Assembly: GCA_965649825.1 (NCBI GenBank)
Contig: OZ287700.1
Location: 1,302,001 to 1,366,000, forward strand
Direction: 5' to 3'
DNA: 64,000 bases
Source: Penicillus capitatus
Lineage: Eukaryota; Plantae; Chlorophyta
Shown here in pieces: positions 1-32,802 of this stretch. Numbering within the stretch: the stretch's first letter is position 1; the number at the start of each line of letters is the position of its first letter. The position numbers and the translations under genes were made by a program. The notes under the pieces are model-generated. The model saw only the letters and a list, made by a program, of their open reading frames with translations, was not told the DNA's origin and did not search any database.

Positions 1-576
1 CCCCGACGAGTAACGAGGGTCTCTGTCCTGGAAGCTGTGAAAGCGTTCGTCGTACGTGAAGCGCACGAAGTAGTCCGTGTCCGTCGGAATGCTGTCCGCG
101 TTGCAGAAGGCGACCTTCACCTTTCTGTGTCCAAACAGTCAACAGTCAAACAGCGAAGGGCGGCTGTACGCTCACACCTGTAAATCGTGCCGACCGGAAC
201 GACATCATTCTCTCCGTTGGGTTGCAGAAAAAGCTCGCGTGCGTCGAACGAAATGGCTTCCAGCGTCGGAAGCTGATCTCCGCCGAAAACGTCGTTAGCG
301 ACGCAGAACCACTGCGCGATAAACTCCTCGTTCTGACATGCATACGGAAATACGGTTGGGTAGGTTCTGGGGAAAACGAACGCTGCGAATCTCGACAACG
401 CGGCACACCCAGACGCGATTGTCGTTGCGCTGCAGACCGCCGTACTCCGCGAAGACCTCGACGCACTCTCCGACTTCAACCTGGACCACAGTACGTTCGA
501 CTGCCTCGAGTTCCGAGTCCCTTACCTCGAATGCCAATGAAGGATCGTCGAAGTCGACCAAAAACACGCGTTGCAT
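1..576 (-). CDS. 5' exons (BAH domain) of a second copy of the CMT-like methyltransferase, running off the window
   Basis: Mirror of 59053-59628 (VEVGECVEV..WVCRVVEI, FIAQWF..DARELFL, YFVRFTYD); the remainder lies outside the window. Confidence 0.8.
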
Positions 577-2073
577 TCCAACCTCGGTAATTAAAACGGT
601 CAGAACATCGATGAGCGCTCATTTCTGCAAAACGAATTGTCGCGTCATTCGACGCAAGATAATGAGCGACTGGCGGCAGATGGGTCGACAAACCCATCGC
701 GGTGCATCGCAACTCGCGCGCCACTCTGCAGTGAGCGCGCAGAGTTCAGTTAAACGGCCAGTGTCTCTGGCCGTCGATCAAAACCCGCCCGAAATGACCC
801 GTGTATTCGGCGCCGAACGGGAAACAACCGAACAACGGCGCCAGAACGCCTATCAAACACGCAGCGAAAGCTCTGTCTGACAATAAACTTTAACACACAC
901 TTCTGCACTGTGTCCGCAAGCGCCTTTCTCTTGTAATTCACACTTAGAACAAATGTACGCCTGCCTTTAGCAGCAGACCGTGCTGATGCGGTTTTTGAAC
1001 GACGAAATCCGGTGAGCGCGAACGAAAGGGGCAGAACTCGGAGGCCTGTTGCAATCCATCGCCGCGGATTCTGAGATCTTGGGTTCTTAGACCATCGCAG
1101 CAGAACGATCATGCCTTTGTGTTCTCGATGAGAGCAAAGTTGCGAGCACGATGGGTGCTAGTGGAGCCAAATCGAATCGAGTCTGGGTGATAGCGAGCCT
1201 CTCTGTATCCAACGAAGGCGCAGTCCACGATGTGATGTCGGTCACTTATTCTCGGGGTCTCTGTTCGAGCACTTGCTTGCCTTATCGTCGTCGCGGAAAT
1301 GGATGCATGCATCGATCAACCAAACTACTCGCCCTTCTTGAAGTGTGCCACAGCGATTCTCTCGAAACCCTGAATGCCCAATTAACTGCATGCACTGTCC
1401 GGGATGAAGGATTGGTTCGAGGTGAGAACGTTTGCTCAACCTCTGCGCAGGATGACCCGCGAGCGTCGACTCGGTCATCAGACCGTCGCTGTGATGCGGA
1501 CACTCACGAGAGAAGGCCGATCAGCGGTTCGACTGGTCGGTAATCGAGTTCCGCGATACAGACAGGGATTCAAGCACCTACGAGGCCTCCTCGAAGCAGC
1601 CGGCAGAAAGGTCGGACTCCCCTCGTTCCGAGGCCTCGCTCGATGCGGTCGGAGCAGGCGTCGACACCTCGACCCCAGTGGTTCGAGCTCTCTGTTAAAT
1701 TCTATGCAAGAGACGTTTTTGGTTCTGTTGCATCCTCGCGTGTCGTCGGCGGGCGCAAGGACCGACTCGATCGGTCGACTTCAACGGTCCATTCGGCCGG
1801 TGATCGATGTTCTGTATTCTCGCGGCGGTGCGACGCCGAGTCGCAGTCGACCAGAGTCACAACGACGCCACGCACCTCGCAGCCTCCACATCGACGAGCA
1901 GTCTGTCCGACGTCCGCCAGCAGATCTCTGCAGACTCGGAATACTCGGAGACGGATGGCGTCGACAATTGTGCGCCTTCCGGCGTCGACGCTGCAGATTC
2001 CGCGCGCACTCGACGATTATACCCGGCGGTCGTGCTCGGACTCAATCGTCCATTCTTTCGTGGTGCATGACTC

Positions 2074-3026
2074 ATGATGGAGTACCTCTCTGACAACGAA
2101 CTCTGTCTGATTCTGACACGCCTCGACGGGCAGAGCTACGCGCTCGCGAAGGTAAGCACTCTCCTCGGCCGGCGCTGATTCGAACGCGGCTCTCGTCGTG
2201 GACAGTCCGTCAACCGGCAGTGGTCGCGCGTGTCGCGTGCGCTAGAGGTGAGCGGCCCTTCCTTCTTCTCTCGAGCCCGCGCGTCTGCGCTCCTCCCCAG
2301 GTCCGCAAGGAGCGTTTCATGAGGCAATGGGGACTGATTCGCGTGAACGGCACCCCGAGAGGACCCACCTTCCTCGAAGTGCGACGGTCCCCTTCCTCGC
2401 ACTCGATGCGAGCTCGCTCCTGTGTGCAGACCGCCAGTCTGAACGACTTCGTCCGCCGACACGTCCTGCAGAAGGGAGATTCGCTGGCTAAGCTGGCTGT
2501 GAAGTACAGCTGCTCGGTCCTGGATCTCAAGGTCACGAACAACATCCTGACAGAGCACGCCATCATGTCCCGGAAGGAGCTGCTCGTTCGAGGTCGCGTC
2601 CCGCAGTCCCGCCCCCACGTTCCAGATCGCCGTCTGCAGTCAACTCTAGGGAGGAGATCGGAGGCCAGGTCGGCCGGATCTACTACTCCGCCGAGGCCAA
2701 GCGCGAGTACATGCTGCTGTACCCTCCCGATCACGTCTTCGAGGACGAAGACGCCTCCGCCGACGCCGCGTCGGCCTCGCGGTCGTGGCTCGGCGGCAGC
2801 ACCAGTCCGAAGGCAGAACGCGTTCGCCGGCAGCTGGTTCTGATGCTGACGCGCAGGTTCAAGATCCAGGCGCTCGTGGCCGAAGCCTACCTGGCCGTCG
2901 CCGACTGGGATCCGCTGAGGGCGATCGACCAGTACCGTGAGTTCCCCTCCGCCGCCCCGCGCCGCGAGACGCTGTGTGGTGTGGCCAGAGCAGGACGAGT
3001 ACTGGCAGGAGCACGGACAGCGGTGA
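2074..3026 (+). CDS. F-box/LysM protein (At1g55000-like architecture), left copy, multi-exon
   Basis: MMEYLSDNELCLILTRL..VNRQWSRV is F-box-like. HVLQKGDSLAKLAVKYSCSVLDLKVTNNIL is a LysM motif. GT-AG introns of about 50 bp; inferred stop TGA at 3024-3026. Confidence 0.8.
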
Positions 3027-3080
3027 TCCTCGCCGCCCCTTCTTCCTTGTCTGTTTGTGTACAACGCTCACTGTAAGACG

Positions 3081-4169
3081 TCACTGCCAGAAGTTAATCG
3101 TCCCGTCTGTCGAAGAGGTCAGCAGCGAGTTCTGTTCCGGGTGGACGGTGCAGGAGCAGACGGTGTCCTCGTGCGCCTGGAGCCGCCTCCTGACCACCGC
3201 GTCGACCATCTCCCAGAGGAAGATGCATCCGTCCTCCGACCCCGCGAAGACGTGGGCGTCCGAGCGCGTGAATCCGCACTCGATCTTGAGGCTCCTGTGG
3301 CGATGGCCGGTGTACGTGGCCAGAACGCTCCCGTCAGCCTTGTCCAGCAGGACCAGGGCATCCGACATGCAGGCGCAGAGCACGGAGGCCCCGTCCCTCG
3401 CCAGGGCAAAACCTGAACCTCCCACCTGACGCACTGAGGATCGCCCCGGCCGAGACGGACCTGTGATGGGCTCTGCGAACTGGTCCATGTAGGCGCGCGC
3501 CATCCTCAGGTCGAACCTCTTCAGCACTCCGTCGACGCTCGATGCGAAGATCTCGCACCTCGACGCCGCCACGCACGTCACGCTGTCCTGCACCGCGCAC
3601 CGTCCCTCCCGGCCAGTCGGGAGGGGACGCGACCTTGAAGCCGGTGAGCTGCTGGATGGCGGACGCGCTGCGCGATCGACAGTCCCACACGTTGGCCACC
3701 CTGTCGTAGCCGCCGCTCACCAGGACCTCCTCGTCCGCCGCGTAGACCACCGAGTTGACCGTGCTGTCGTGGCCCCGCATCCTGCGGATGGTGTTTCCGC
3801 TGGCGACGTCCCAGAGGAATATCTGACGGTCGCCGCCGCAGGTCGCGAACTTCGCGTTGTCTCCGGCGATGCAGGCGTCTCGCACCTCGTAGCCGTGCCC
3901 GGCGTACGTCTTGATCAGCAGCCCGCGGTAGGGGTTCCACAGACGCGCCGTCCGATCCTTTACGACGCCTCGCTCGACGAGGCCTGTGCGACGGTGCCTA
4001 CCTTCCCGCAGGAGATGCAGTAGGAGCCCTGGGCGTTGAACCGGACGGCCAGGACCGGTCCCTCGTGGCCCCGGAGGCCGCGCATGAGGGTGCACGGCAG
4101 CTCGGCCTGCGCCTGCGCGTCGGAGTCGTCCTGGGCGTCGTCCGCGTTCGAAGACGTTCCGAAGTCCAT
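3081..4169 (-). CDS. WDR83: WD40-repeat protein WDR83/MORG1-like, left copy
   Basis: LRGHEGPVLAVRFN..CGKDRTARLWNP..IKTYAGHGYEVRD..GHDSTVNSV..SSTDGTINFW; three GT-AG introns. Confidence 0.88.
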
Positions 4170-4187
4170 CGGACGGCGAAGGGAGGA

Positions 4188-6296
4188 TTAGAACAGGAAG
4201 TCCGATGTGACAGTCATCGCCCAGCCGAACTTTTGCAGCAGCGTGTTGGTGTAGATCTTCTCGATCGGCATCTCGTGGCGCTTGCACCAGGCGACGGAGA
4301 TGCGGGGATCGAGGTAGTTGATCTTGGACGTCCCGAGGGCGACGGTCTTCAGGCTCTCCTTGTTCTGCATCTGCACCTGGACCCTCTCCCTCTGCGCCGC
4401 CTTCTTCTCGCGGCGCTTCTGCAGAACGGCGAGCTGCTTCTGGTCCCTGGAGCTCGCTGCCCCCTTCAGATCGCCGATGGCGTCGTCGATCTCGCGGATC
4501 TCCTGCTCGAGCTGGGAGACCTTCTCCGTCAGACGCTCGATCTGGTTGCCGTGCGTCTTGGGCACCGCCCTCTGGTGGTTGCACAGGATCGCCACCTGCG
4601 CACACGGAAGTCCCGGATCTCGGCGCGCCGATCGGGTTCGCGGACCTGCTTGTTGGCCTCGTCGTAGGCCGACCGCTTGCGCTCGACCGGGAGCTGTGCG
4701 TCGAGTTCGGCCTCGAGCTGCTGCTGCAGCGTGATGGACGCGTTGTACGTGCGGAACACCTTGGCAGAGAGCCCGTCCATCAGCTCCTTCAGCTCCCTGT
4801 TCAGGTCCTGCGCGTCGAACAGGTCGAACAGCTGGTCGCCCGGCTGCTTTCCTGCACACAGAGCCCGGGTGGTCGTCGAAGAGGCGTCCATCTGTCCCCT
4901 TACGCGTCCCGTTCCTCCGACAGGTGCAGAAGCCGGCGACGTTGTTGTAGACCTGCTCGTCCACCTTGACCGTGTTCTCGTAGCGGATGGAGTCCTTTCC
5001 GAGGAAGTCGAACCTGATGCGGTTCGGCTGGATGCACTCCACGTTCTCGACCTGCAGGGAATCGCCGCCGCCGCGGGGACGGGTCCGGAGGAGCGGACCT
5101 TCAGCGTGCAGCAGCCGACCGTGTCCGCCTCGTCCTCGTCCTTCTCGTGGCCCGCCCTCAGCGCCAGGCGGTCGATGAAGTACAGCGCCGTGCCCATCTG
5201 CCTCTTCTGCGGATCCTCCGACGTCCAGTCGGCCCGATACTTCTCGCGGATGCGGTCGATGTGCTCCTTCAGCTTCCTGGCCTTCTCGTACTTGGCCATG
5301 TCGTTCTCGCTCTTAAAGGTGCTGTTCGCCGCCAGGAACACGTACTTGAAGTCCTTCGGCGATATGGGATCCTTCCAGAAGGCCAGCCAGGTCACGGCGT
5401 CGTCGTGGCGGACGGCCTTCCAGGACTGTCCGGGATATGGGTGCTCCGGGATCGGCGCGTCTGGACCTATGTTGATCGTGATGTCCCGCGGGTAGATGCG
5501 CCTCTTGATGCGCCCCATCTTCGGATGCTCGCCGCGTCCGCGGAACAGACCCGGGGGCTCCACGCGAAAGTTGCCAACCTAGACGGGCATCCTCGGGCGC
5601 GGCCGCCCTCGAAGACGTTCCGATGCCCACCTGCTCTGGCTGTCCGTCGACCAGGGCCGTCTTGTACTTCTCCTCCGCCTCCTGTTTCCTGAGGCGGATC
5701 TCCTTCTTCTCCTCCTTCGACAGGGCCTTGCTCTTCTGCTTCTCGGCCTGGTGCCACTCGTGGATGGGCCCGAAGTCGATCCTGTCGAACTCCTGGATCA
5801 TGTGATCACCGCCCAGCAGTGCCCGGAAGTCTTCCCAGAAGTTCTTGACGAAGACGGGCTTCCCGGCGTAGTCCGTGTCCAGCATGACCGCGAAGAACGT
5901 CGCGGCCTCCTCCTGCTCCGGCGTCAGATCGACAGGGCGGCCGTCGTAGAGCGGCTTCACGCCGTGGGGCTCGTACTCCGGCGGAAACATGACGCCGTTG
6001 TGCTGCAGCGTGTTCCACCTCTTCTTCACCTCTGCGGACGGGAACTCCTGGAAGGGGGTTGGGAGGGTGTCGAGGGGACTACCGGCAACGCGCTTCTTCC
6101 TGTCGGCCCCGCGCTCTTCGGAAGCCTCGCGCTTTCGCGTCCTGCCGGGGGCTCTGCGTCTGTGGGAGGAGGGGGTGGACTGGCTCGACATCGCGGTCGA
6201 GCTCTTCCGTCCGCTGTACCGCGCACTCAGAGACAGCTCGTCCTCGGACTCGTCGTCGCTGAGCGACATATCCGCCGAGCTCGAAGCACTCGACAT
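4188..6296 (-). CDS. TOP1: DNA topoisomerase I (type IB), left copy
   Basis: WxTLQHNGVMFPPEY, EPPGLFRGRGEHPKMG, YFIDRLALRAGHEKD..ADTVGCCTL, FDFLGKDSIRY, AKVFRTYNAS, and catalytic GTSKINYLDPR; introns about 50 bp. Confidence 0.97.
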
Positions 6297-6663
6297 ACTC
6301 GCAGGGATTCTGCTGCCACCGAGTACGGACAGGCAAGGCAGTTGTGAGTGGACGCGCAAACGATTGGCTGAATTCGCATCATTACAGGGACAGCGATACT
6401 GACAGCGACAGCTGCCGCATATAGGTAAGGAGGCTGTTTATGACTTATTGTATGTACGTTGAATGTGAAAAGGCAGGATTACAGCATAGGCGAACAGTCT
6501 CTGGAAAGATCTTCTCGAGTTGACTTAACTTGCTTCAGAAATCATCGAGACGGGACTGAGCAACAGATGTTCCAAGATATCCACGCCAAGATCTACTAAG
6601 CCATCCACCCTCTTGGTTGTCTGAAGAAGATCCTTCGTCCATACTAAAACACAAGACACTGCA

Positions 6664-7832
6664 TTAAGTGCCAGAGTCGACAGGGTGTTGCACGATTGCA
6701 GTTCCAACAAAGTGGGAACATTGCCCATCGTTGGACTTGCTGAATCGCTTGACATCAGAGGACACTGTCTTCCAATCTTCACTCGAAAATCTTGCATCAA
6801 CTGTTATGCACGAGACCTCTGTTAGATTGCGCGAATTGGATGGGTCACACCTGTTCTGTAGCTGATTTCTCTTCATCTTCCGATCTCTCGATATCAAGTT
6901 CGACAGAACTGCTCTCTCCCATGTCTCTCTTAGTCGTCCACCTTCTGTGAAAGGTATAGAACACAAGTGGGACAGTATACCAGGCCACCACGATGTCCAC
7001 AGTGTAATGCTTGCGTGAGGCAATGATAAGCAGCGACAAAATGGCTCCCATGATCCATGAGAGTATCTTGAGAATAAAAACGCTCCCATACGTTGTGTAT
7101 GTTAAGATCCCCACTAAGATAAACGTTGTGTGTGAAGAAAAGATCAGATCTCCGCAGCCGTAAGCAGCTTGTTGCACTGGGTCGTAGACAATATGTCCAT
7201 ACCAATGCTTTGGCCAGTCCAATGTCGCCGTGTTCTGCCCAGTACGGCAGTGATAGTTCGGAGACGGCAACTGCGTCGATAAGAAGGAGATGATGCGCAG
7301 CGCCTGACACGCAGCCAGAACGGTAAGCAGGCGTGATGCGAGGACAACTGTATAGAATCGTTTTCGGCTCAGTACGAATGGCGAAAGGATCCAGAGAACG
7401 AATGAAATGAAGAGCGTGTAGAAGATACTCTCACTGACCCACGCATTCTCCTCTCCCAATTCCTGCGGCACGTAATCTCAAAAATTTGGGAGAAGGAATA
7501 GGAAGAGTTGACATGCGTGAGCTCGAATCCAAGGTCTCCCAATGGCCGAGACTGAGGCTCGTGCAGGCGCTTTTCCAGTTGGGTGAAGATTCCATGGATG
7601 TATTGAAAGACGATGCCGAAGAGAATCGTCTTCCAGCGATACTTGAGCATGGGAAACTAAAGAAAGGAGAAAGAGCTGAACCAGTTTGTCCGTCTCGGAG
7701 ACCTACTTCCACTACAAACTCCATACGGATACGCCTCCAGATATCTACAAGAAAAGCAGAACAACGCGTCGACGACGCTGAGTCTTCAGGAGTGAAACGT
7801 GCATCGGGCTCGACGCGGATGATACTACTCAT
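6664..7832 (-). CDS. Inositol phosphorylceramide synthase / sphingomyelin-synthase family
   Basis: WKTILFGIVFQYIHG..DLGF, TQLPSPNYHCR, GCGDLIFSSH, IIASRKHYTVD motifs; two 50-bp GT-AG introns. The last exon and stop are uncertain (6845 or 6664). Confidence 0.88.
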
Positions 7833-8402
7833 GGTGGTCTCGACGATGAAATATGTATGTTCGTTCGTCGACTTTCGTTTTAATGGACCATAAATTGACG
7901 GAGACGGTTGGAAGTATTACAGTAGCCGCTCGTGCTGTCAGGCAGTAAGGTCACTTTTTCAGTGATGACGTGACAAAGGCGTTTCGGTTGATGAACTGAA
8001 TCTGTCTTGAGGGCGCAATGAATGGTTGGGAGTGAGCTCATCGAGATCGGTTAGAAAGTAGGGGTCGTCGGATGACGATAGGCGTATTGACTGATCACTA
8101 TTAAGGACGGCTGGGGCATAGATCGCGAGCATGTAAAACTAGAATTGCTCATCCATCCGCTGTTTTGAGCCGTACCCACAATTGTGGATACCGTCCGCTT
8201 AAGATTCGTATCGGGGGGCCTGTCGCAGAACGAAAACGAGTGGCACGACAAAAATCGTCAAAGTTCGCCTACCAAAGATCGACCGTTGTCCGTCTTGCCT
8301 TCAAAAAGTGCCAGTCGGCAGTTTTCGCAACGTAAGCGGCGGAGTGTATTCCTCACAGAAAGAGTATTGATTGAGACCCCCTGTTTTCATAGTTCGAGCA
8401 GC

Positions 8403-9698
8403 ATGGGCTCCGCCATGTCTCGTCCTGAACCACCACGCTCTGAACGTGTGTGTACCACCATTCTGAAATACTCGACTATCGGTCTCTGTGGACTGCAATT
8501 TGTTGTCCGCCGTCTACGTCGACCCGGTAAGCGAACGGCTGTCTTGCGTTCCCCGCGCCCCTCGACAATGAAACTCGTCGGGGTGAATCCGATTGCGCTT
8601 GACTGTGACGTGGTTACCTTATTCCCGAATTCTTCGCGAGAGATTAAGGAACTGCAAGTGCTGGAATCAAAGATGTGCCCCACATTTTTCAACTCGTTGG
8701 ATGCGCTTCTGAACTTGAGCGTCCTCGAACTGAGGGGTGTCGAGGTCGATGATAGAGTTGATCTTTCGTTTCTGAAGAGATTACACAATTTAAGAACTCT
8801 TGTTATTGATGACTGCTTCGAGTTGACGAGTGGCGGCTTGGATATTCTATTACAGTTGCCTCAGCTCGACCGACTGGAACTCGGAATTGAGGCACTGGCG
8901 CAACTCAGTTACGAATTCTGCGCTTCATGTTCGTTTGAACTATCGCTCATTCTTTACGGTCCTCGTTGTTTGAACGATTTTCTAAAACTGATGGCGATTC
9001 AGAATCTCGTGAGTATTTGTTTTATCGATTTTTGGACACTTGTGTATCCAGTGTGGATGAGGGAAATGCCAAAACTTAGATGTTTGTCTTTCAAGAACGG
9101 TATCGTGAAGAATGGTCAAGACAACGACACTGCTGTTTTTCCACCGTCCTTAAAACGCGTCTCCTGCGTTTCTTGTTCTATGGATCGCCAAATCCTAGAA
9201 GCGACGCTTCGCAGTGCAGATCGACTAACCGAATTGGAGCTGGATCTTCCTTTCTTTCCGGAAGACATTGCGATTTCGCACTGTACGAATTTGAATGTTT
9301 TGAGTATTTCAGCAAAGGAATGCGACGGGGAGATGCTTGAACAACTGACGTCGAATAAAGCTCTTCGTGTCATCGAACTCTCTGGGTGTTGCAACTTATC
9401 GCCGCAGCATTTTGTTGCTCTTGACCACTGTCACAGTCTAGTCAAGATATCAATCTCGTGCTCATATCTCAGTCCGGGAGTTTGCGAACAGTTAGCCGCA
9501 CTTAAAGGACTTCAGTACCTCGAGTTTCATTATTGCCTCGGAATTCACCTGAGCGAATTCCGTAATACACGAGGACTCCGATGCCTCATTCTTAACAAAT
9601 GTCACAAGTTACAGGGAGACGTAAACGCATTTCTTACATCACTTCCCGTTCAAGGACTCGATTCGTTCTACTTTGAAGAGATCTCGCCTGGTTCTTAA
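8403..9698 (+). CDS. Intronless LRR protein, paralogue A (N-terminus MGSAMS)
   Basis: Long ORF with LxxLxL repeats (LSVLELRG, LRTLVIDDC, LRVIELSGC). Aligns by eye along its full length with 51174-52451 and 11500-12783. Confidence 0.85.
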   Translation: MGSAMSRPEPPRSERVCTTILKYSTIGLCGLQFVVRRLRRPGKRTAVLRSPRPSTMKLVGVNPIALDCDVVTLFPNSSREIKELQVLESKMCPTFFNSLDALLNLSVLELRGVEVDDRVDLSFLKRLHNLRTLVIDDCFELTSGGLDILLQLPQLDRLELGIEALAQLSYEFCASCSFELSLILYGPRCLNDFLKLMAIQNLVSICFIDFWTLVYPVWMREMPKLRCLSFKNGIVKNGQDNDTAVFPPSLKRVSCVSCSMDRQILEATLRSADRLTELELDLPFFPEDIAISHCTNLNVLSISAKECDGEMLEQLTSNKALRVIELSGCCNLSPQHFVALDHCHSLVKISISCSYLSPGVCEQLAALKGLQYLEFHYCLGIHLSEFRNTRGLRCLILNKCHKLQGDVNAFLTSLPVQGLDSFYFEEISPGS

Positions 9699-11499
9699 TC
9701 CTTGCAGAGTATGAAGTGATGTTGGTGATCTCTTGCACTGATGATGACGTTCTGGTACTGTGTCCTTGCTCAGAGACGTTAACATAGCGTCCACAAACGT
9801 CTTTTGTCAGGAATTTAGTGCTGGCTGAATTTTACAACACAGAAATAATGTCTTCTCTGCAGACACTGCTCCAGTCTGCGGTGTCCGCGAGAAGCGCATT
9901 TCATAGACGTGTTTATGTTCGCATTACCCAATCTGTTATCAACAAGACTCTCTCGTTCCTATATTTCGTAACACAGAGATCTAGAGTGAGACGCGTTACT
10001 GCTATTAGTTTATCCTGTTGGTATTTCATTGCAGCAAAAGTCACTGTTTGTGCCGTCCTTGTGTTTCGCAGAACTGGACATCTGCTGTGCTTCTCCAGTC
10101 CCCGTGCAACGAGGTGGTTTCTTATTCAAAGATCTAACGCACGTTTTGACTTCTTTTTTCCGACCGTCGATTGTATTCTTGACGTATGTATTGTTTGTGG
10201 ATTGTTTGTATCGGAGAGGATTTTGTGGACGGATCGTCGTCAAAATGGCGTTCTCCAAATGTTCTACAACGATCCCAAAAGGAATCCGCACACAGCCTTT
10301 GACATTGCGGTTATATTTGACGCAAAACAGCGGAGAAGTTGAAGATTGACACTCAAATCTCTCACATACATTCATGAATCTGTTCAACTCAAAGCTGATG
10401 GGCGCCCCAATAAATGTGCTCAATGCTAGAGGCAGATATCAACGCGTTTTCACTACTCGTTTTCAACAAAAGACAGAAAATCGAAGAAGAAAATACAAAT
10501 CACATTCGAAAATTCCATAGAGACGTTTCAGTATGCTTGTGTTTCTAATACCTGTTGTCGCACTTTGTTAATTTCTCTTTGTTTGTGTTTTACACACGGT
10601 GTCTCGTCAGAACATACAATGCGTCATGGCTCACGCCCAACACTCATTGTACCACTACTGATCGTGCAAAGCGGACAGAGACTTCACCATCTTCGTCCAC
10701 GGATGCTGCATTGAATGGCGGGTGTACTGACCGATTGCTAAGAACAGTGTCGCGCAGGGCCTTCTTTTCACTGGAATCTCAATGGTGACGTCTTTCAGAT
10801 ATTGCATCGATCGTATCCTCAAGGGTCGTCACCTTCAACTCAGTGGCCGGGAGAATTGGCAACGGCGAAGCCTGCAATCTTCAAACGCGCCGCGGTCTCG
10901 GCGCAATGATTCTCACAATCGTCGCCGGACTGCACTGTCAACGGGACGACGTGTGTATCCGTGCGCCGTCTTTTGTTCGAGACGCAACTGTTACGATCAT
11001 ACGGTTAACAATGCATGCAGGTACATGGCGTTTTTACGTGTCAAGACGCGAATGACCTTTCCTTGCAGATATCGACAAAAGAACACTCTCAGCCGAAGTC
11101 TGATGACACGACGCCGCATCAAAATCCCGTCCTTACGTGGACGGCATTCGTCACGGGATATTTACAGTACACTCCTTAAGATGACGGACGTTCTATCTTT
11201 TCGACACACGACGATTAGAGGTGCGCCGGCGCTTGATTCGCTTGAATGCAAACGAGATTTTGTTCATTCGATTGACGCTAAGCTTTTCGCCTTCAAGGAC
11301 AGTCTTTCCTTTGAGCCACGTGACGGAATCTTAACGTTTGTCGGACGCATCGCAAAGGAATTCGCGCTGTGTCTCTTCGAGTACAAAACTGTCCTTTGCG
11401 TCTCGGACCCACGCATCTGCCGCCTTTGCAACGTAAGCGAACGGGAATATACCGCGTAACACACATTCTTAAGGCCAATACCCTTGCGTTTTCAGGACC

Positions 11500-12783
11500 A
11501 TGGGTTCTGCCATTTCCCATTCCGCAGGTTCGTCCACGTCGACAGGGTGCACGGCGAAATGCCTCTGTAACAAACTACCAAACTTGCGCCGTCGTTGGCT
11601 GGAAAGCCTCGCTGCGATGGGCGGACAGTCTAGCGCTATCGTCACGGAAGCAAGACGGATGGATCTAGATGGCATCAGCAACGACGCTCGCACCGTCGCT
11701 CGGCAACTGAACCAAACATATCTACGCTGGGAGGAGTCGAATGTTTATCCTTCGGTCTTCGATTTCGTGGCGATGCAGACGCGTCTGCGATCTTTGACGT
11801 TAAGAAACATCGAAAACGACGCGCAGGTCGGTATCATCCTAAAAACGATTCCATATCTCGACACTCCGGCGACGGACGACTACGACCAATTGGTGACTGG
11901 TGGTCCACATGTCTTGCTGGCATCGTTTCGCCTTAGACGCGTGGTGCTCGGGATCGGGACAATCGATCGCTTGATCCATAGTCTTTTCCTAGAATGCACG
12001 GCCAATGTGTCTCTGACACTTTATGGGCTGCGGCGTATGGATGATCCGCAGAAGATAAGAGCCATCAAGAATCTCGTGAGTTTGAAGTTCGTCAATTTTT
12101 TGACGATGGATTATCCACTCTGGGTAAAGTGCATGGGAAAACTACAGAGCTTGTCGTTTGACAACGGAACAGTACGGGAGACTCACGAAGACTACACCGT
12201 GTTCTTCCCGAGAAGCTTGACGCATTTTTCATCCCGCGTCTGCAAAATGGATCAACGCATCGTGGATGCTATTCTTTACAACGGATATCTGCTGCATGAA
12301 CTGGAGCTCGATCTCCCGTGCCTCACAAAGGACATTCCCATTCGTTTCTGCTCGGGTCTGCGTATTTTGAAGATATCCGCTGTAGAATGCGATGGAGATG
12401 CCCTCCGCCAACTCTCTGTTAACAAGCATCTTTGCAACATCGATTTATGTGGATGCTTGAGAATGGAAGCAAAAAATCTATCCGCCTTCCATTCGCTGAG
12501 CCAACTCCATACAATTGCGATTTCCAACAGTTCTCTTGGGCAAGGGTGTTGTCATCTTCTTACTTCGTTGCACTGTCTTCGGTCTTTAGAGTTTTATGCC
12601 ACAAGGGGAATTGATCTTACAGAACTCGCAGGCGCGAATAACATCCGGAAACTCTCTTTAGTGAAATGCATCGATCTACTGTCTAAGGAGTTGGGTGATG
12701 ATCGAATGTCTGAGGAGTTGGATGGTTTTATGGCATCGGAACTTGTCGTGCAAAAACTTGATTCGCTTGCGATCGAGTTCTAA
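11500..12783 (+). CDS. Intronless LRR protein, paralogue B (N-terminus MGSAIS)
   Basis: 427-aa ORF sharing blocks with paralogues A and C (LTLYG.R, ELELDLP, ISAVECDG, LEFY..GIDL). Confidence 0.85.
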   Translation: MGSAISHSAGSSTSTGCTAKCLCNKLPNLRRRWLESLAAMGGQSSAIVTEARRMDLDGISNDARTVARQLNQTYLRWEESNVYPSVFDFVAMQTRLRSLTLRNIENDAQVGIILKTIPYLDTPATDDYDQLVTGGPHVLLASFRLRRVVLGIGTIDRLIHSLFLECTANVSLTLYGLRRMDDPQKIRAIKNLVSLKFVNFLTMDYPLWVKCMGKLQSLSFDNGTVRETHEDYTVFFPRSLTHFSSRVCKMDQRIVDAILYNGYLLHELELDLPCLTKDIPIRFCSGLRILKISAVECDGDALRQLSVNKHLCNIDLCGCLRMEAKNLSAFHSLSQLHTIAISNSSLGQGCCHLLTSLHCLRSLEFYATRGIDLTELAGANNIRKLSLVKCIDLLSKELGDDRMSEELDGFMASELVVQKLDSLAIEF

Positions 12784-13809
12784 CTCGATCGAAAACAAAC
12801 TTATGGGAGGGGTAGAAGTATTTGTTTGTGGTTTGAACGACAGAACTGGGATGTGTGTTTTGGACGTCGGCGTGGAAGAATAATCCGCTCAAGTTCGCTA
12901 CCGATACACAATTTTAGAGCTGTCTTTCTCGAAGTCGAAAATACCTCCTCTATGTTTACCGTACGTCACAAATAGACGGACATCGTGCACCAAATCCAGT
13001 TCCATTAGCTCTTCGGTGTATGCTTCTATGACTGGTTCTATGTAGCTCTAGAACGAAGCCATGAAGTTAAATCATGTAATATATATCATTTACGACTGCC
13101 ATGGGATTTGATTTTGATACAATTGCTTTTTTGTTTTAGCATTTTTCGGTGATTCTACTAGTTTTCTCTCCTTTGATGGGTGGACGTGCGCATCCGAGAA
13201 GAATCATCCCGTTGTATCACTTTATGAACTGTGTCGTCTGTTTTGGACGTCACTTTTCTAGCGGATTGGCTTTGACAGTGCAGAGAATGTGTATCCAAGA
13301 TCAGTCAGTACATGCATGCCTAATATTCTCTCTTTGACTTTCTTCTGCCCACATGCAGTAGCAGAATCTCTGCTGTTTGCAGTTTCCCTCTATTCCAATG
13401 ATCTCTGCACTAGTTTCGCTTGGAAAGAAGCCCTTTGATCGCTAGGCAGAAGACAGACGAGTGACTGCCAACCAGCCTTGGAAGACAACAGCAATGCCGT
13501 GCCAATGGGGACACGTGAACGAAGTCTTTGCTCACATGATATGTTGTTGCATTCAGACGATCGCACACAGACAACGTTCTTATATCAGGCAATCTGAAAT
13601 TTCATTTGTTGAACTCATCGCTATCTCTGGTTTACTTAATTCCTTGGCAAGCACTACAGTTCACTCTGTCCTGTTGTTGACACATTCTGTAGAGTTTCTG
13701 TCATACATGTGTGAAATCGATCAGTATCGGGATGGAGGGATGCTCATGCCCTTCCTTCACCGATACGTTGTACGACAGAGCGACGACGAAACACCTTCTG
13801 GCAGAGACG

Positions 13810-15016
13810 ATGCGTATATCGCGTTCATCACTAGGATCCTGGCCGAAGACGTTGTTTCGCAACGCCGTCAGCACGATACGTCAGGACTACCGTTTTCTGT
13901 ACACCGTCCAGGCAAGCTGACAGAGATATCACATCCGATGAGATGTACCTTGTTTGCAACTAGGTTCGGACGACGGAAGAATCTCGGGACATAGTGACCG
14001 ACACACAGTCCTTTCTGCGCAATCCAACAAACGGGGCAGAGATATTTCTCGTGGGAACCGCGCACATCTCCAAGCGAAGTGCCAGAGAAGTCATATCTTC
14101 GGGAAGGGCACGGTGATAGAAATGGCTGGCTGGTTGTTCAGGTCCAAAATGTCATCCGGTCTGTGAAACCCGACACCATCTTTCTCGAACTCTGCGATGA
14201 ACGCGCCAAGAGACTCAAGTATATAGACCGACCTTCTATAAACAGGGTAGAATATGTGGTACCTGACAAGGGATGAAGACAAGGGCGATAAATCCATCAT
14301 CGATGAGGTGTTGAAGATGTTCTCTTCTCCACCGGGAACCTTTGGAGAGCTCTTCATGAGGAGTATGTACAAGTGAAGACGCTATCGATCGTGCTATCTC
14401 TTTTTGATGTGACGTGCGTTGTGGTTTAGATATCTAGAGGTTGTTGGTTTTAATCCGGGGGCGGAGTTCAGGGTCGCTCTAAAAGAGGCAGAAGCCCGGC
14501 AGGCAAAAGTCGTTTTGGGTGATCAACCTGTCGGCGTCACGATGCAAAAGCTTTCAGATGCGATGACATTGTCAGAAGTCTTCTCGCTAATGACGGGCAG
14601 TCTGCAAGTACGGCATCTCACTCTTGTCAAGTGTGACATTTGAGCGAGTCCTTAGCCTCCGCCCAAAGAGCTCCGAGAACTCTTCAGAAATATGAGCTCG
14701 TTGGATACGTACGTGTTGCTCTATGTGTCATCACATCTGCTCGACATGTTGTTGCAGCCTTGTGGAGGGAATAAAGAGGCGGCCATTGGTGAAGGCGATG
14801 AAGGATAACTTGGAAGAAACGAATCCAAATCTCGTCAAGGTTCATTCCCTTCTCTTTCGCTTTCTTGAAATCGCGGTTCAGATTCTGGTCCATGAGAGAG
14901 ATGCGTATATGGTGGAGAAACTCTATCAGTTAGAAGGCCGCGTCGTGGGCGTGGTTGGACTGGGACACCTGGATGGAATCGAGCGTTTGTGGGAGAGCAA
15001 ACAGGGTTCATTGTAA
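13810..15016 (+). CDS. TraB/PrgY-domain protein (TRABD-like), probable organelle-targeting N-terminus
   Basis: IFLVGTAHISK, VKPDTIFLELCDER, PGAEFRVA, VLGDQP, HERDAYM, VVGVVGLGHLDGI. First intron inferred as GC-AG (13912-13963). Confidence 0.88.
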
Positions 15017-15032
15017 CCGTGGCTGTCTACAT

Positions 15033-17398
15033 CTACATCGCCTTATGATGTGACTGTAACTTGGAATTTTCCCGCGATGTCGTTTGGACAGAGCCTTCCA
15101 AGAGTTTGCTCCAGTATGACCGGACATTCTTTCCTGCTTGAGTCGGTGAGGCAGCGATGAAAGATTCTCCGTATCCAGCCACAAAAGAGACGCGGACGAG
15201 GCCCAGTTTCCGCAACTGACGCAGTGCATCGTCAACATCAAATGTGATCTGCACTGCAAAATTGGAAAGAGAGGATGGTTGCTGTGAGGACCTTGTCTTC
15301 GAGAGTCCTCAGCATGTCTGTCAGCTTCTGTTTGATTTCATCTTTTCGCAATGCAGCTTTGCTTGAGAACAGCAGAGAATATGCCAATGCACACTACGAC
15401 CAGTATTTTCAGCAGCAGTGACACGATAGCCGCTTGCCTGTTTGAATTGCTGAAGATAAGCAGAGTGTGCCAGATATGCCAATGCTCCTTCTTGGCCGGC
15501 AATCGTGCGTCTCCTCAATAGATCGTTCAAGAAATTGTCATACCTGCGATACAGATATGAGAATCTCTGTTTTCAGCTGCTGTCATCACTGACCTATCGT
15601 ACATCTTCTTGTAGCCCATGATAACGCGGATACCATAAACGACAAGAGTCGTGATGGTGACAATGTCAAAGAGAACGGATGTGAATCGAGCATGAGCAGC
15701 CAATGCTACACAGTCGCTGTGTTTGATATCTGACCACGAATCGGTAAAGAATACTCACAGACGACCCCAACAAGTGTGATGAGATCGAGGCGCAGTCCAT
15801 CCAGTGGACGAAATTGCAACAGCTTGGCTGGCACCACCGCTTTCCAGATGGGAATCTGTACTGGCAAGAGCCATGCGGTGAAAACCGACAACGTGCGTCC
15901 TGGCTTACAGGGATTTCACTGTAGATTCGGATCTGGATGTTTTTTCGCTCCTCAATTCTCGGAGGATTTGGACCTTTGATTTTCTAAAAGCCTTTCTAAC
16001 AATCCTGGATCGTCGACAGTTGCAGAGGCACCTGTTTGAGTTGATCAATCGGCGATTCTTTGTCTTGGTATCGATAGACGACAACGAGATGCTCGAAGGT
16101 GGGCTCCTGCAATTCGACCTTTCTGAGCAGTCCTGACGGTCCATCCTTGATCACGCCACCTATACACATCATTCAGATCTGCATGGTTGGGAGTATACAT
16201 TGGTACCAATGGTGTTCGGCAGGGCGATTCTGCTGAGATAGACAGGATCTCCTCCCTCCTTTACCGGCCACACCGCATCAAAATGTTCGATTGGCAATGC
16301 ATCTAACTACAAAGTCGTTTTTCTTTCCGTCGATAACATACAGACGTATCTCACTCTTGGAATATATCCCCAATCGGCAAGGGTGACTAACGTGCCGCCT
16401 CCAAATGCCATCATCTAAACAGAGACCGCTGTTCGACAGATACACGACTGAAATCACGACTCTTGGAGAGATTCCCCATTCGTTCATAGAGACAAGGACA
16501 TCTTTGCCTGCGCGTTTGATCTTTTTCCATGATCTTCGATCAATTTGCAGCTGCCGACTCATGATCCCCTCTGCCACATAGAGAGATCCAAACTGCTCAG
16601 TTAAGCTCGGATCTGTCTCATCCTTCACTCCGATCTTTTTCAACACCAGCTTAATTGCGTTCGTTAAGAACATCCAGAGGTACAGGATTCCATCCTTCAA
16701 AGTACTGAAGGCAGACTTCACGACGAGCAGTTGCAGATAGTCCATCATTGGCAAGAACAGTCTTCTGAATTCTGTCTTCACGCCGTAGCTACACCACACA
16801 GCAGACATGAGAACTGGATGTTTCATGAACTTCTGCACATCCGGGAAGAAGACAATGATCACGGAGAAGGCGCACCTTACCCTCTCTTGAAAGTAAGCAT
16901 GGGACGAACTTCGGCTGGCAGATCATCACTCACTTCTCCCCGAACAAACCCAGCTAGAGCACACACCGTGCAGGCACTGGACTGGACAAGTCACCATTCG
17001 ACTTACCATCCATCTTGGATGTATCTGCCTTGATGAAGATCTGCGAGAGGTAGTCTGAGTTTAGACTGCGGGACAATGCCACGTCTCGGACATCCAGTTG
17101 ATCATAATGCGCACGCGCCAAGAGCTTCTTAAGACATTGAACGAACTCCCTAGATGTTGGATGATCTTCATGGAATGCCTGATGTGCGCAGACGATATGA
17201 CCAGTCGGCTTCTCTTGCTTTCTTGTTGATCTTGTGGTAACGTAGTTTCTTTTGCCTTTCCTGGAATTCTACCTCCAAGTTCTCACTTGGTTGTCTTTGT
17301 TTGCCGAACAGAGGTAACAGTCCATGGAGCATTTCTGGAAACCCATTCGAATCGCTCGCCTTTATCTCTTCCATGGACGATTCAACAATCGATTCCAT
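15033..17398 (-). CDS. DUF3754-family membrane protein, multi-exon
   Basis: SLNSDYLSQIFIKADTSKMD, hydrophobic central segments, and C-terminal FDVDDALRQLRKLGLV resemble plant DUF3754 proteins. Exon map not fully resolved. Confidence 0.6.
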
Positions 17399-17418
17399 AC
17401 TCTCCGACACCTGTATGT

Positions 17419-18210
17419 CTACAGTGCAGTATTTCTCTCACTCTTTTGCTGTGAAGGGACCTCGTCTGTATCAAGCTTGCCGATGACATGTTCCAAATCA
17501 TTCGCCTTCTGAAAAGCATTCAGCGCCTCGTCGGCATCCAGCTGACATTCAAACCTGAGCCAGTTACACTGTGTTCACAATCGAGTTGTTGCAGAGGCGT
17601 TACTGAAGGATGCACTCCATTCCTGCCAGAACAGGGCGAATGCTGTTCCAGTCGTTCTTACACATATCCTAAGCACGGCATCTTGAATCTTATGCACAAG
17701 AATACTGTCCATGGCAGAAGGACCTCGCAGAGAGTCCAGATCTGATCTTTGGGGACTGGAATGTGCGTCTGATGCTTCACTTGGATACGAGATACCGAAC
17801 TGACAGCTGTACATGGCACGAATACATCCGTCGATGTCGTTTCCACAAGGCATACGTTGTTCTTTCTCTTGCTTCTGCGCTCTTATGATGAAGACTGTAT
17901 CTGAGATGCGTTTTTGCCTCTGTCGCCCGAGGCCTTTTCGCAGACACGGCTGTCGCAGGGATAGAAGACGACGTTTCATGGAGAGTGGCCAAATCGGATG
18001 GGGTGACTGCAGCAATGAGGTTGGCCAGAACATCCGAGTGCAGCAACGCGGCATTGATGGAACTGCACCGTGAGATGATGTGACGACCGATACCACATAT
18101 AACATGCGCTACACACACGCCGTCTTCAAATGAAGGACACTCGGTAAGGTACGTCTTTACGATAAGAGCGAGAAAATGTGCAGCGCGTTGCAATATTTCT
18201 TGCTCCAAGT
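17419..18210 (-). CDS. Hypothetical multi-exon protein (5' end unresolved)
   Basis: Open exons joinable by GT-AG introns (..IWTLCE|DMCKNDW..ILQ|FECQLDADEAL..NTAL*); stop at 17419-17421. Confidence 0.45.
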
Positions 18211-18982
18211 AGTCATGTTAAAGATTGACTTGAGCACAGGGCGCGCCGAACGAAGAACGAACGAACTCTGTGTCACATCAATGCGAAATGCTTTTGCTCT
18301 TTGTCCAGACGAGATTTGACTACTGTAAGATCTTCTAGCTGCTCGTGATTGGTCGAAAATTAAACGATTGTTTTCATGTTATCAGACAGCGACGACGCCA
18401 GGGATGTGACGTGGAGAGGAACTGTTAGAACATGGAACGTCACTGTCGAATGACGTGACGTTATTCTATATACTCACGTACAGACTCACCTGTAAGAATA
18501 CCCGACCGTTTCATCTCTACTCGCGGCCTCGACGCGCGTATACCTCTCGCGGCACCCCTCGGTCCTAACAGAACATTGATGCATTCGGTCTTCGAAATGG
18601 TGTCATTCGGAATCCCTACAGCGTCCTTGGCATTCCAACTTCCGAGATCCATCGCAGATCGACTGAGAAATCGCCATCTCGAGACGAAACTAATGACGGT
18701 TCGCGCAAAAAACCATAAAGAAAACCGGTATGCAGGCAAATCGTTTCTCGACAATGCAATGTTCTTTTTACGGTTACCGCATCCCGAACTGCAGAACTCA
18801 GTCGGCTATCAGACGAGAACTTTTCCACACTATCGACCAAAGCAAGGCTTCACCAAAAACGGGGACGCCTGTGCAAGTGACCGATTGTCTCACGCATCTC
18901 ACAAAAATCATGTTCGACATTTCAGACAGCCCAAGGAAAAGGCCCAAATGGTCTCACTGTGCATCAGGCCATGAACAAAGTG

Positions 18983-20338: not shown

Positions 20339-20498
20339 CGAACGAGCGAAGGCGTTCCAGACGAACCTGGAGAGGATAGTGCACCTCGCGTTCCTTCAGG
20401 TCTCCTTCAACGATGACGTGCAGAAGGATACCACATCGACCAGGGTTGATCACGCTTTCGACCCAGAGGTCCTGCTTCATCTGTGTGGAGAGAATCTG

Positions 20499-21532: not shown

Positions 21533-21761
21533 TCTTGGATATTCTTTCTTCGATTTGAATGACACTCGGCAAGAGATGCCATTGGGGTGGCAGTAGTATA
21601 CAATGAAACTTCTTTGTGGTTTTCTGAGTCCTGCATGTTTAAAGCGAGTCGATCGAACACACCTCTAGCAACCTGGACTGGGATGCATAAGGGACGTCTT
21701 ATACTGATCTTCGACGCGTTCGTTATCGCGAGCTACATCGTCTACTCTGTCTGTACAGTCG

Positions 21762-21925
21762 CCACAAATGAGATGGCTAAACAGCTTAACAGGTGTCTGT
21801 ACAATTGCCACAAATGAGATGGCCTAAACAGCTTAACAGGTGTCTGTACAATTGCCACAAATGAGATGGCCTAAACAGCTTAACAGGTGTCTGTACAATT
21901 GCCATTAATGAGATGGCCTAAACAG
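21762..21925. repeat. 47-bp tandem repeat, about 3.5 copies
   Basis: CCACAAATGAGATGGCCTAAACAGCTTAACAGGTGTCTGTACAATTG starting at 21762, 21808, 21855 and 21902. Confidence 0.95.
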
Positions 21926-32685: not shown

Positions 32686-32802
32686 AAAGTGACAAAAAAC
32701 TTCAAGCATGGCCTCCAATAAGGCGAAACAACACATTTCGACACTAGAACTACCGGCAAAACATGCGAAGAGATTTGAACGGAAGATGTAAAAACAAACG
32801 CG

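What the first reader, a model, noticed from the sequence alone, without database searches (positions are those of the whole stretch)
1..9698. Strata of divergence across the arms: apparently identical outside, increasingly diverged inward
Seen: about 1-1670 gives identical translations in all overlapping frames in both arms, although it is largely non-coding. From about 1677 inward there are frequent SNPs and small indels, including amino-acid changes in TOP1. The last ~30 bp (6520-6551) are more degenerate. Just inside, LRR-A (8403+) and LRR-C (52451-) form a much older inverted paralogue pair that still shares 5'-flank sequence. Inference: an old inverted duplication is being homogenised by polar arm-to-arm gene conversion, as described for sex-chromosome palindromes.
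Basis: partly seen in the sequence, partly recalled or inferred. Interest (0 to 1): 0.7.

Follow-up and report, generated by a model that had tools for sequence, protein, structure and literature searches.

The report
Gene-converting inverted repeat, green alga

Summary
Window 1-1677 is identical to 59628-57952. Further in, the arms differ at 70 bases and 2 indels (1.44%), and the last 30 bp are degenerate.

The window start cuts the left arm. In other contigs of the same species the arms run about 6.4 kb further out, so the identical part lies mid-arm.

A related species has the same inverted repeat with the same inner boundary. Arms differ by about 1% within a genome and by 14.4% between species, whichever arms are compared. 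That is concerted evolution, so arm-to-arm gene conversion of an old duplication is well supported.

"Polar strata" is not supported. In the window's right arm, a 2.8-3.2 kb patch of left-arm sequence (about 57960-60772) sits between right-arm-type sequence on both sides. Another haplotype's right arm lacks the patch. The related species shows neither a multi-kb identical block nor an inward gradient.

Both TOP1 copies are intact and under purifying selection (dN/dS 0.15). LRR-A and LRR-C are old inverted paralogues, but their shared 5' flank is not above chance.

An assembly artefact cannot be excluded without reads. This is a new member of a known kind, large palindromes maintained by gene conversion.

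The parts
1..6551 (.). Left arm of the inverted repeat, inner half only. The window start cuts it. The full arm is about 12.9 kb in conspecific contigs.
   Evidence: alignment to 59628-53074; arm continues about 6.4 kb further out in contigs A and B
53074..64000 (.). Right arm, from the inner boundary to the window end. The outer boundary is inferred about 2 kb beyond the window end.
1..1677 (.). Left-arm part of the block with no differences. It is also identical to the left arm of contig B.
57960..60772 (.). Tract of left-arm-type sequence inside the right arm: 47 markers equal the left type and none equals the right type of contig A. This is the minimum extent; the maximum is 57880-61104. 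Inferred to be one recent non-crossover gene-conversion tract of 2.8-3.2 kb.
57583..57879 (.). Island of right-arm-type sequence just inside the tract, with 9 markers equal to contig A's right arm.
61105..64000 (.). Outer right arm of right-arm type. It shares the contig A right-arm allele at all 87 sites where contigs A and B differ (2 nearby private SNPs aside), and differs from the left-arm type of contig B at 0.6-7% per 500 bp.
53359..55440 (+). TOP1 (eukaryotic type IB topoisomerase), right copy. Five exons: 53359-53997, 54050-54529, 54577-54724, 54777-54982, 55033-55440. 626 aa, intact.
4188..6269 (-). TOP1, left copy, with the same five-exon model (left position = 59628 minus right position). 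It is intact, with 8 nonsynonymous and 15 synonymous differences from the right copy (dN/dS 0.15).
55632..56547 (+). WD40-repeat gene, right copy, with exons in at least two frames. The mirror copy is at about 3081-3996 on the minus strand.
59877..62542 (+). Probable C5 DNA methyltransferase gene in the right arm. Its 5' part lies inside the conversion tract. Pfam matches are below threshold; motifs I, IV, VI and X are visible in the frame translations.
6520..6578 (.). Degenerate inner edge of the left arm. The right-arm counterpart is about 53047-53105. The ancestral boundary, seen in the related species, lies about 27 bp inside 6551.
6552..53073 (.). Spacer of 46.5 kb at 45-52% G+C. It holds PAP2_C, LRR-A, LRR-B, a starch synthase, an XRN-like gene, an LRR_6 protein, alpha-glucan water dikinase, patatin and LRR-C.
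8403..9698 (+). LRR-A, 1.85 kb inside the left boundary.
51174..52451 (-). LRR-C, 0.6 kb inside the right boundary. It is the closest paralogue of LRR-A (49% amino-acid identity) and mirrors its orientation.

Best explanation
The window comes from a nuclear chromosome of an unnamed green alga. It holds a large inverted repeat, with arms of about 12.9 kb and a 46.5-kb spacer, that predates the split from a related species. Intrachromosomal gene conversion keeps the arms about 99% alike: a break in one arm is repaired using the other arm as template, mostly without crossover.

Divergence along the arms reflects how long ago each position was last converted. It is a patchwork of overlapping tracts of different ages, and it differs between haplotypes.

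The zero-difference block at 1-1677 (right arm 57952-59628) is the visible part of the latest tract. That tract is 2.8-3.2 kb, lies mid-arm, and most likely copied left-arm sequence into the right arm.

The degenerate last 30-45 bp fit an edge effect, because tracts need homology on both sides and rarely reach the boundary.

Shown: the repeat, its conservation, concerted evolution, and the bounded tract that is polymorphic between haplotypes. Inferred: the repair mechanism, the direction of copying, and that the tract is biological rather than an assembly product.
For: (1) Arms are 98.87% identical, with no difference in 1677 bp (P=2.9e-11).

(2) Related-species contigs C and D, each with both arms internal to long contigs, have the same inner boundary to within about 30 bp and the same flanking genes (PAP2_C and LRR-A on the left; LRR-C, patatin and GWD on the right).

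(3) Left/right divergence is 0.95-1.13% within genomes. Between species it is 14.4% for all four arm pairings in every 500-bp bin, including the innermost. None of the arm-fixed differences is shared between species.

(4) The window's right arm switches cleanly. It matches contig A's right arm at 93 of 93 informative sites for x<=-1476, matches the left-arm type at 47 of 47 for x=-1143..1677, and matches A's right arm again at 8 of 9 for x=1678-2046.

(5) Contig A's right arm against the left-arm type shows no identical block: longest run 337 bp, permutation P=0.24.

(6) In the C/D quartet, 16 sites are fixed by haplotype and 15 show the crossed pattern. These need conversion or recurrent mutation.

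(7) Both TOP1 copies are intact, with dS 0.037, dN 0.0055 and introns differing at 6 of 201 bases. Both copies are therefore functional and the raw 1.4% understates neutral divergence.

(8) A polishing collapse should hit the least diverged parts first. The block lies where the unconverted left and right types differ by about 1.7% (47 of 2819), more than the 0.6-0.8% seen at x=2047-3500, which was not collapsed.
Against: No reads are available. The window's right side is an exact mosaic of the two haplotypes assembled in ENA ERZ25074695. Only 6 SNPs are private to it, and all lie at the switch points, which is also what a haplotype-switching consensus would give.

The window starts inside the identical block, which might be a contig end.

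The window's own left arm outside position 1 is unseen. The claim that the tract is bounded on its outer side in terms of left versus right relies on contig B's left arm as a proxy (99.86% identical to the window's left arm over 6.5 kb).

The direction of copying is inferred without an unconverted left arm from haplotype A.

A significant inward rise of divergence does exist in this haplotype, so some position dependence is not excluded.
Confidence: 0.75

Rival explanations
1. The identical block is an assembly product. It would come from a collapse, a mis-polish or a path switch between arms or haplotypes in the source assembly. The real right arm would then carry right-arm-type sequence throughout.
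For: The window's right side is a block mosaic of contigs A and B: W=B at 60 sites, W=A at 9, W=B at 53, W=A at 87. All 6 private SNPs sit at the switch points. The window starts inside the block. Both ENA contigs break near this repeat. Contig A starts at window ~9724. Contig B ends about 10 kb past the right arm, in left-flank-like sequence, so assemblers clearly struggle here.
Against: The patch is interior to the contig and flanked by right-type sequence on both sides, so two switches are needed within 3.2 kb. The block lies where the left and right types differ more (about 1.7%) than in the uncollapsed stretch at x=2047-3500 (0.6-0.8%). The window is not a re-read of contig B: it lacks the 5.3-kb retroelement and differs at about 14 SNPs in the left arm and spacer. 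The left arm of contig B, which runs straight through the region, is identical to the block.
Confidence: 0.15
2. Conversion is polar, starting outside and fading inward. It leaves ordered strata whose oldest layer is the LRR-A/LRR-C pair.
For: Divergence rises inward within 1678-6551 in this haplotype (p=0.01 raw, 0.0002 scaled). The boundary is degenerate. LRR-A and LRR-C are mirror-oriented closest paralogues just inside both boundaries and are older than the species split.
Against: The left arm is cut by the window and the block is mid-arm. Further out, the right arm differs from the left type by 0.6-7% per 500 bp. Contig A's right arm has no block. In the related species, differences per bin are 5, 3, 5, 4, 8, 3, 1, 1, 3, 10, 1, with no gradient and with the TOP1 region the most alike. 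The innermost 500 bp are as fully homogenised between arms as the rest, relative to the other species: 84, 88, 86 and 82 differences. PAP2_C has no right-side partner, and the LRR upstream regions are not significantly alike.
Confidence: 0.07
3. The mosaic arose from crossovers rather than non-crossover conversion. These could be crossovers between the arms, which invert the spacer, or between homologous chromosomes.
For: Read outward from the spacer, contig B's right end shows a right-type inner arm, then left-type sequence from x<2046, then the left-type outer junction and left-flank genes (serpin, a 542-aa gene). That is what an inversion isomer produced by an arm-to-arm crossover at x=2046-2327 would look like. 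Rare inversions are known in Y palindrome P6 (PMC3723533, title).
Against: For the window, two exchanges about 3 kb apart are needed, which is formally a conversion-like event. All spacer junctions seen in the window and in A, C and D have the standard orientation. Contig B cannot be one molecule, because it has left flank at both ends, so an assembly path switch explains it as well.
Confidence: 0.1
4. The duplication is young and of uniform age. The uneven divergence would then only reflect coding constraint.
For: Raw divergence is lower in coding parts, and neutral sites in TOP1 differ by 3-3.7%.
Against: Both arms exist in the related species with the same boundary, while between-species divergence is 14.4%. 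After scaling by between-species divergence, heterogeneity remains (chi-square p=0.0002, or 0.013 with the last bins merged). No difference in 1677 bp of the fastest-evolving, non-coding part cannot be due to constraint.
Confidence: 0.01

Closest known systems
Large palindromes of primate X and Y chromosomes, maintained by arm-to-arm gene conversion (PMC8327919; PMC3723533; PMC8600007; PMC8981503)
   Same: Inverted arms over 8 kb around a unique spacer. Protein-coding genes lie in the arms. An orthologous palindrome exists in a related species, with arms far more alike within a species than between species. Conversion tracts are multi-kilobase and polymorphic among haplotypes. Possible rare inversions.
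   Different: Arm identity is 98.5-98.9%, below the 99% criterion used for those palindromes and far below the 99.9% or more of the Y. Conversion relative to mutation is therefore much weaker. With c = 2*mu/d (a formula I recall from the Y-palindrome literature) and d of about 0.035 at neutral sites, c is about 60 mu. The organism is a unicellular green alga. There is no evidence of a sex or mating-type chromosome, and the arm genes are housekeeping genes (TOP1, WD40, a DNA methyltransferase-like gene). GC bias was not tested.
Palindromic repeats on the willow W sex chromosome (PMC7023750)
   Same: Large palindromes in the green lineage (Viridiplantae) that are conserved through gene conversion.
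   Different: Those lie in a non-recombining sex-determination region of a land plant. Nothing here ties the locus to sex determination.
Plastid genome inverted repeat with flip-flop isomers (my own knowledge)
   Same: Two inverted copies flank a single-copy segment and are homogenised by recombination. One contig end hints at an inverted isomer.
   Different: This locus is nuclear: it has spliceosomal introns of about 50 bp, eukaryotic TOP1, LTR retroelements and Mb-scale contigs. Its arms are not identical, and isomers are not demonstrated.
Evolutionary strata of sex chromosomes (my own knowledge)
   Same: Blocks of different divergence lie along a duplicated or paired region.
   Different: Strata are ordered, fixed and shared among relatives. 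Here the blocks differ between haplotypes and species, and no left/right difference is shared across species.

Membership tests
Large palindrome maintained by arm-to-arm gene conversion | Two inverted arms of at least 8 kb flanking a unique spacer | tested here: met
   The window shows 6551 bp of the left arm and at least 10.9 kb of the right arm. Conspecific contigs put the outer boundary about 6.4 kb outside position 1, giving arms of about 12.9 kb. The spacer is 46,522 bp.
Large palindrome maintained by arm-to-arm gene conversion | Arm-to-arm identity of at least 99% (criterion of PMC8327919) | tested here: not met
   98.87% including indels in the window, 98.5% in C and 98.3% in D over 11 kb. 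Counting substitutions only over x=1-6551 the figures are 98.9-99.05%. The locus sits at the threshold rather than clearly above it.
Large palindrome maintained by arm-to-arm gene conversion | An orthologous palindrome in a related species, with arms much closer within a species than between species (concerted evolution) | tested here: met
   About 1% within genomes against 14.4% between species for all four arm pairings. The inner boundary and flanking genes are the same.
Large palindrome maintained by arm-to-arm gene conversion | Conversion tracts that are polymorphic among haplotypes, or site patterns shared between arms | tested here: met
   The window's right arm has a bounded left-type tract that is absent from contig A's right arm. 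The C/D quartet has 16 haplotype-fixed and 15 crossed sites. Caveat: this rests on assemblies, not reads.
Large palindrome maintained by arm-to-arm gene conversion | GC-biased outcome of conversion | not tested
   The inner 10 kb of the arms is 55-67% G+C against 43-52% in the spacer and outer arm. This follows gene density, and no polarised test of AT-to-GC against GC-to-AT changes was made.
Sex-chromosome palindrome | Located in a sex-linked or mating-type region, with arm genes having reproductive expression | not testable with these tools
   There is no linkage or expression data. The haplotypes differ by only about 0.5% in the spacer, which does not suggest a dimorphic mating-type region.
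Ordered evolutionary strata / polar homogenisation | Blocks of divergence with fixed borders, ordered by position and shared among haplotypes and relatives | tested here: not met
   The block is absent in contig A's right arm and absent in C and D (longest identical runs 337, 633 and 635 bp). C and D show no gradient. No left/right difference is shared across species.
Invertible segment (flip-flop between inverted repeats) | Both spacer orientations present in a population or sample | tested here: inconclusive
   All complete junctions have the standard orientation. Contig B's right end joins a right-type inner arm to the left-type outer arm and left flank. That is either an isomer or an assembly path switch.
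Collapsed-repeat or haplotype-switch assembly artefact | Raw reads do not support the identical block | not testable with these tools
   No reads are available. The indirect arguments for and against are given under the rival explanations.

The most novel reading that the evidence does not exclude
The repeat may be an active recombination module in a green-algal nuclear chromosome. Besides non-crossover conversion, arm-to-arm crossovers would flip the 46-kb gene-bearing spacer, and contig B's odd right end would be a sampled inversion isomer. Conversion would also be locally mutagenic, because all six SNPs private to the window's right arm sit at the two borders of the newest tract. If so, this would be a tractable unicellular system in which tract borders, inversion and repair-associated mutation can be read directly from haplotypes.
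Probability: 0.15. Interest if true: 0.6.

Novelty: new member of a known kind. Interest (0 to 1): 0.4.

Why it matters
Large palindromes kept alike by gene conversion are mostly known from animal, and a few plant, sex chromosomes, where their role is debated. This one lies in a unicellular green alga and carries housekeeping genes: two functional TOP1 copies, a WD40 gene and a DNA methyltransferase-like gene. It is conserved across two species and has a conversion tract caught in the polymorphic state.

It shows that the same dynamics occur outside sex chromosomes, at a much lower ratio of conversion to mutation. It also offers a simple case for measuring tract length, edge effects and possibly inversion.

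For the scan, it is a caution. A window edge made a mid-arm tract look like an outer stratum.

Tried and rejected
(1) I first read the left TOP1 copy as a pseudogene because the long frame has a stop at 5313-5315. That was wrong. tblastn with algal TOP1 proteins and a splice-site search give a five-exon gene whose middle exons use another frame. Both copies are intact.

(2) The third homology search used a concatenated query of six window and contig proteins and returned nothing. The search was wasted.

(3) A JGI metagenome scan with TOP1 exon 2 found only distant relatives, 84% identity or less over best segments and none conspecific.

(4) Contig A's left arm does not exist in that contig. 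Look-ups of left-arm ORFs returned only contig B. Cluster membership showed no LRR-A or PAP2_C on A. Contig A starts at window ~9724.

(5) One look-up failed because of a single amino-acid difference between the window and contig B.

I did not pursue it by other means, so the outer boundary in C and D is unknown.

(7) Rfam, tRNA and tandem-repeat scans found nothing in the arms.

(8) The nucleotide similarity of the LRR-A and LRR-C upstream regions is not above shuffles.

(9) The organism could not be named. The best named TOP1 hits are core chlorophytes, at about 55% identity in tblastn alignments of exon 2.


Full report
WHAT IS IN THE WINDOW. The window is nuclear DNA of a green alga. It encodes a eukaryotic type IB topoisomerase, WD40 repeats, alpha-glucan water dikinase, patatin, a starch synthase with CBM53, an XRN-like protein and several LRR proteins. 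Introns are about 50 bp. The best named TOP1 relatives are chlorophytes. An inverted repeat has arms at 1-6551 and 53074-59628, 98.87% identical, around a 46.5-kb spacer of lower G+C.

THE OBSERVATION. A base-by-base alignment gives no difference in 1-1677. The first mismatch is at 1678. Up to 6551 there are 70 mismatches, a 1-bp indel at 1944 and a 3-bp indel at 6443. There are ten differences in 1678-2046 and five in the last 30 bp. At the inner rate of 1.44%, a run of 1677 identical bases has probability 2.9e-11. No permutation reached that length. Within 1678-6551 divergence rises inward. The raw slope is +0.22 per kb (p=0.01). Scaled by between-species divergence to allow for constraint, it is +0.27 per kb (p=0.0002).

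THE WINDOW EDGE. The left arm is cut by position 1, while the right arm continues to 64000. Exact-protein look-ups found the same species in ENA assembly ERZ25074695. Contig A (ctg340425_37x_l, 702,701 bp) covers the spacer from window ~9724, the right arm and 640 kb beyond. Contig B (ctg340500_39x_l, 1,169,807 bp) covers 1.08 Mb of left flank, the left arm, the spacer and the right arm. Below, x is the left-arm window coordinate, negative outward; the right-arm position is about 59629 - x. Homology between A's right arm and B's left arm runs out to about x=-6400. There, A continues into a short-chain dehydrogenase gene that straddles the boundary, and B's left side continues into a serpin flank. 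B's left arm also has a 1385-bp insertion at the edge. The arms are thus about 12.9 kb, and the 'outer' identical part lies mid-arm.

AGE AND CONCERTED EVOLUTION. A second ENA assembly (ERZ26696514) holds a related species on two contigs, C (1.68 Mb) and D (704 kb). Each has both arms internal to the contig. The inner boundary is the same to within about 30 bp. The neighbours are the same: PAP2_C and LRR-A on the left; LRR-C, patatin and GWD on the right. Over x=1-6551 the arms differ by 1.07% (window), 0.95% (C) and 1.13% (D). Window against C differs by 14.4% for all four arm pairings (931, 930, 934 and 933 differences). The same equality holds in every 500-bp bin, including the innermost. 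None of the arm-fixed differences of either species is shared with the other. This is the test used for primate X palindromes (PMC8327919). It shows that the duplication predates the species split and has been homogenised along its whole length in both lineages.

WHAT THE IDENTICAL BLOCK IS. Over 43356-64000 the window is a clean block mosaic of contigs A and B. It equals B at 60 sites (44280-56900), A at 9 (57583-57879), B at 53 (57960-60772) and A at 87 (61105-63994). Take B's left arm as the left type; it is 99.86% identical to the window's left arm. Take A's right arm as the right type. For x<=-1476 the window's right arm is right-type at 93 sites and left-type at none. For x=-1143..1677 it is left-type at 47 sites and right-type at none. 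For x=1678-2046 it is right-type at 8 sites and left-type at 1. So a left-type patch of 2.8-3.2 kb sits inside the right arm with right-type sequence on both sides. This is the signature of one non-crossover conversion tract.

SUPPORT FOR A SINGLE RECENT TRACT. A's right arm against the left type shows no such block. Its longest identical run is 337 bp, as expected by chance (P=0.24). C and D have longest runs of 633 and 635 bp. With B's left arm as proxy, the window's arms would differ by 0.6-7% per 500 bp outside the tract. The profile is therefore diverged, then identical, then diverged. It is not identical outside and decaying inward. In C and D the counts per bin over 1678-6551 are 5, 3, 5, 4, 8, 3, 1, 1, 3, 10, 1 and 7, 6, 5, 3, 3, 4, 1, 2, 3, 11, 0. 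There is no gradient, and the TOP1 region is the most alike. The inward rise in the window belongs to this haplotype lineage, not to the locus. In the C/D quartet, 16 sites are fixed by haplotype and 15 show the crossed pattern, which again points to exchange between arms.

THE BOUNDARY. In the related species the arms stay alike to ...GGCTGACAGATGTCCCC. In the window both arms have drifted over the last 30-45 bp, with derived changes in each arm, and the ancestral edge is about 27 bp inside 6551. This fits an edge effect. It is not an ancient stratum, because the differences are not shared across species.

GENES IN THE ARMS. TOP1 has five exons (53359-53997, 54050-54529, 54577-54724, 54777-54982, 55033-55440; 626 aa). 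The long single ORF the gene callers report is partly accidental. Both copies are intact. They differ at 15 synonymous and 8 nonsynonymous sites (dS 0.037, dN 0.0055, ratio 0.15) and at 6 of 201 intron bases. Both copies are therefore under purifying selection, and neutral left/right divergence in this part is about 3-3.7%. In contig B the left copy is broken by a 5.3-kb LTR retroelement. The arms also carry a WD40 gene and a probable C5 DNA methyltransferase gene whose 5' part lies in the tract. No RNA genes or tandem repeats lie in the arms. The block at 1-1677 has no Pfam hits. It includes the fastest-evolving stretch between species (23-36% over x=500-2000), so it is most likely non-coding.

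THE LRR PAIR. LRR-A and LRR-C share 49% amino-acid identity. Each is closer to the other than to LRR-B (35-38%). They are mirror-oriented just inside the two boundaries. The duplication predates the species split, because the related species' LRR-A is 81% identical to LRR-A and 50% to LRR-C. PAP2_C, which lies between the left boundary and LRR-A, has no partner on the right. The upstream 500 nt are not more alike than shuffles. A former, larger palindrome is possible but not shown.

CAVEATS. There are no reads. The window's right side is an exact mosaic of two assembled haplotypes. Its only six private SNPs (57910, 57951, 60918, 61084, 61271, 61283) all sit at the tract borders. This could be repair-associated mutation (mutagenic break repair is reviewed in PMC7407515; I have seen only its title and abstract), an unsampled donor, or consensus error at switch points.

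Contig B's right end is odd. It has a right-type inner arm, then left-type sequence from x<2046, then the left-type outer junction and about 10 kb of left-flank-like sequence up to the contig end. It is either an inversion isomer, as a crossover between the arms would produce, or an assembly path switch. I therefore did not rest any conclusion on B's right arm outside x=2046.

Several points argue against an artefact for the window. The patch is interior and flanked on both sides. It lies where the two types differ more than in stretches that were not collapsed. The window also differs from contig B: it has no retroelement and about 14 SNPs in the left arm and spacer.

VERDICT. The locus is a new member of a known kind, a conserved large palindrome under concerted evolution, in an unusual host and with weak homogenisation relative to mutation.

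Noticed in passing
window 57910, 57951, 60918, 61084, 61271, 61283: These are the only six SNPs private to the window over 43356-64000, compared with contigs A and B. All lie at the two borders of the conversion tract and none lies elsewhere in 20.6 kb. Possible causes are repair-associated mutation, an unsampled donor, or consensus error at switch points.
   Followed up: partly
L093 1-4940 and L094 1-4931 (contig B), L095 1-7646 (contig A): Beyond the outer boundary, contig B's right end carries left-flank-type sequence (serpin, a 542-aa gene) joined by the left-type junction. Contig A's right arm abuts a short-chain dehydrogenase gene that straddles the boundary. This is either an inversion isomer or an assembly path switch.
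   Followed up: partly
window 5005-5008; L005 13588-18853: In contig B a 5.3-kb LTR (Ty3/gypsy-like) retroelement with a 1476-aa polyprotein is inserted in an exon of the left TOP1 copy, with a 4-bp overlap that suggests a target-site duplication. It is absent from the window. Contig A has another such element in its spacer (L097 9491 onward).
   Followed up: partly
window 19131-35379: This 16-kb spacer segment has no counterpart at that place in the related species, whose spacer is 30.0 kb against 46.5 kb. It holds a starch synthase with CBM53 (~29.1-30.2 kb), an XRN-like gene (~31 kb) and tandem repeats at 21.7-23.4 kb.
   Followed up: partly
window 59877-62542 (+): A probable C5 DNA methyltransferase gene lies in the right arm. 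Motifs I, IV, VI and X are visible in the frame translations, but Pfam matches are below the gathering score.
   Followed up: partly
window 53359-55440 versus L007 5783-7867: TOP1 intron positions differ between the two species. The first intron of the window's gene appears absent in the related species.
   Followed up: no
L094 3546-4930: Contig B's left arm has a 1385-bp insertion, containing a kinesin-motor fragment, about 43 bp inside the outer edge of the arm. It replaces 20 bp that are present in both right arms.
   Followed up: partly
both ENA assemblies: Each sample yields two versions of the locus at near-equal coverage (37x and 39x; 156x and 168x) that differ by about 0.4-1.2%. This suggests a heterozygous diploid or two co-occurring strains.
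   Followed up: no
L004 2943-4514 and L005 2946-4517; window 63691 onward: A 523-aa LRR-like gene starting MGQKLTKEPK lies in the outer part of both arms. It has no BLASTP similarity to LRR-A, LRR-B or LRR-C.
   Followed up: no
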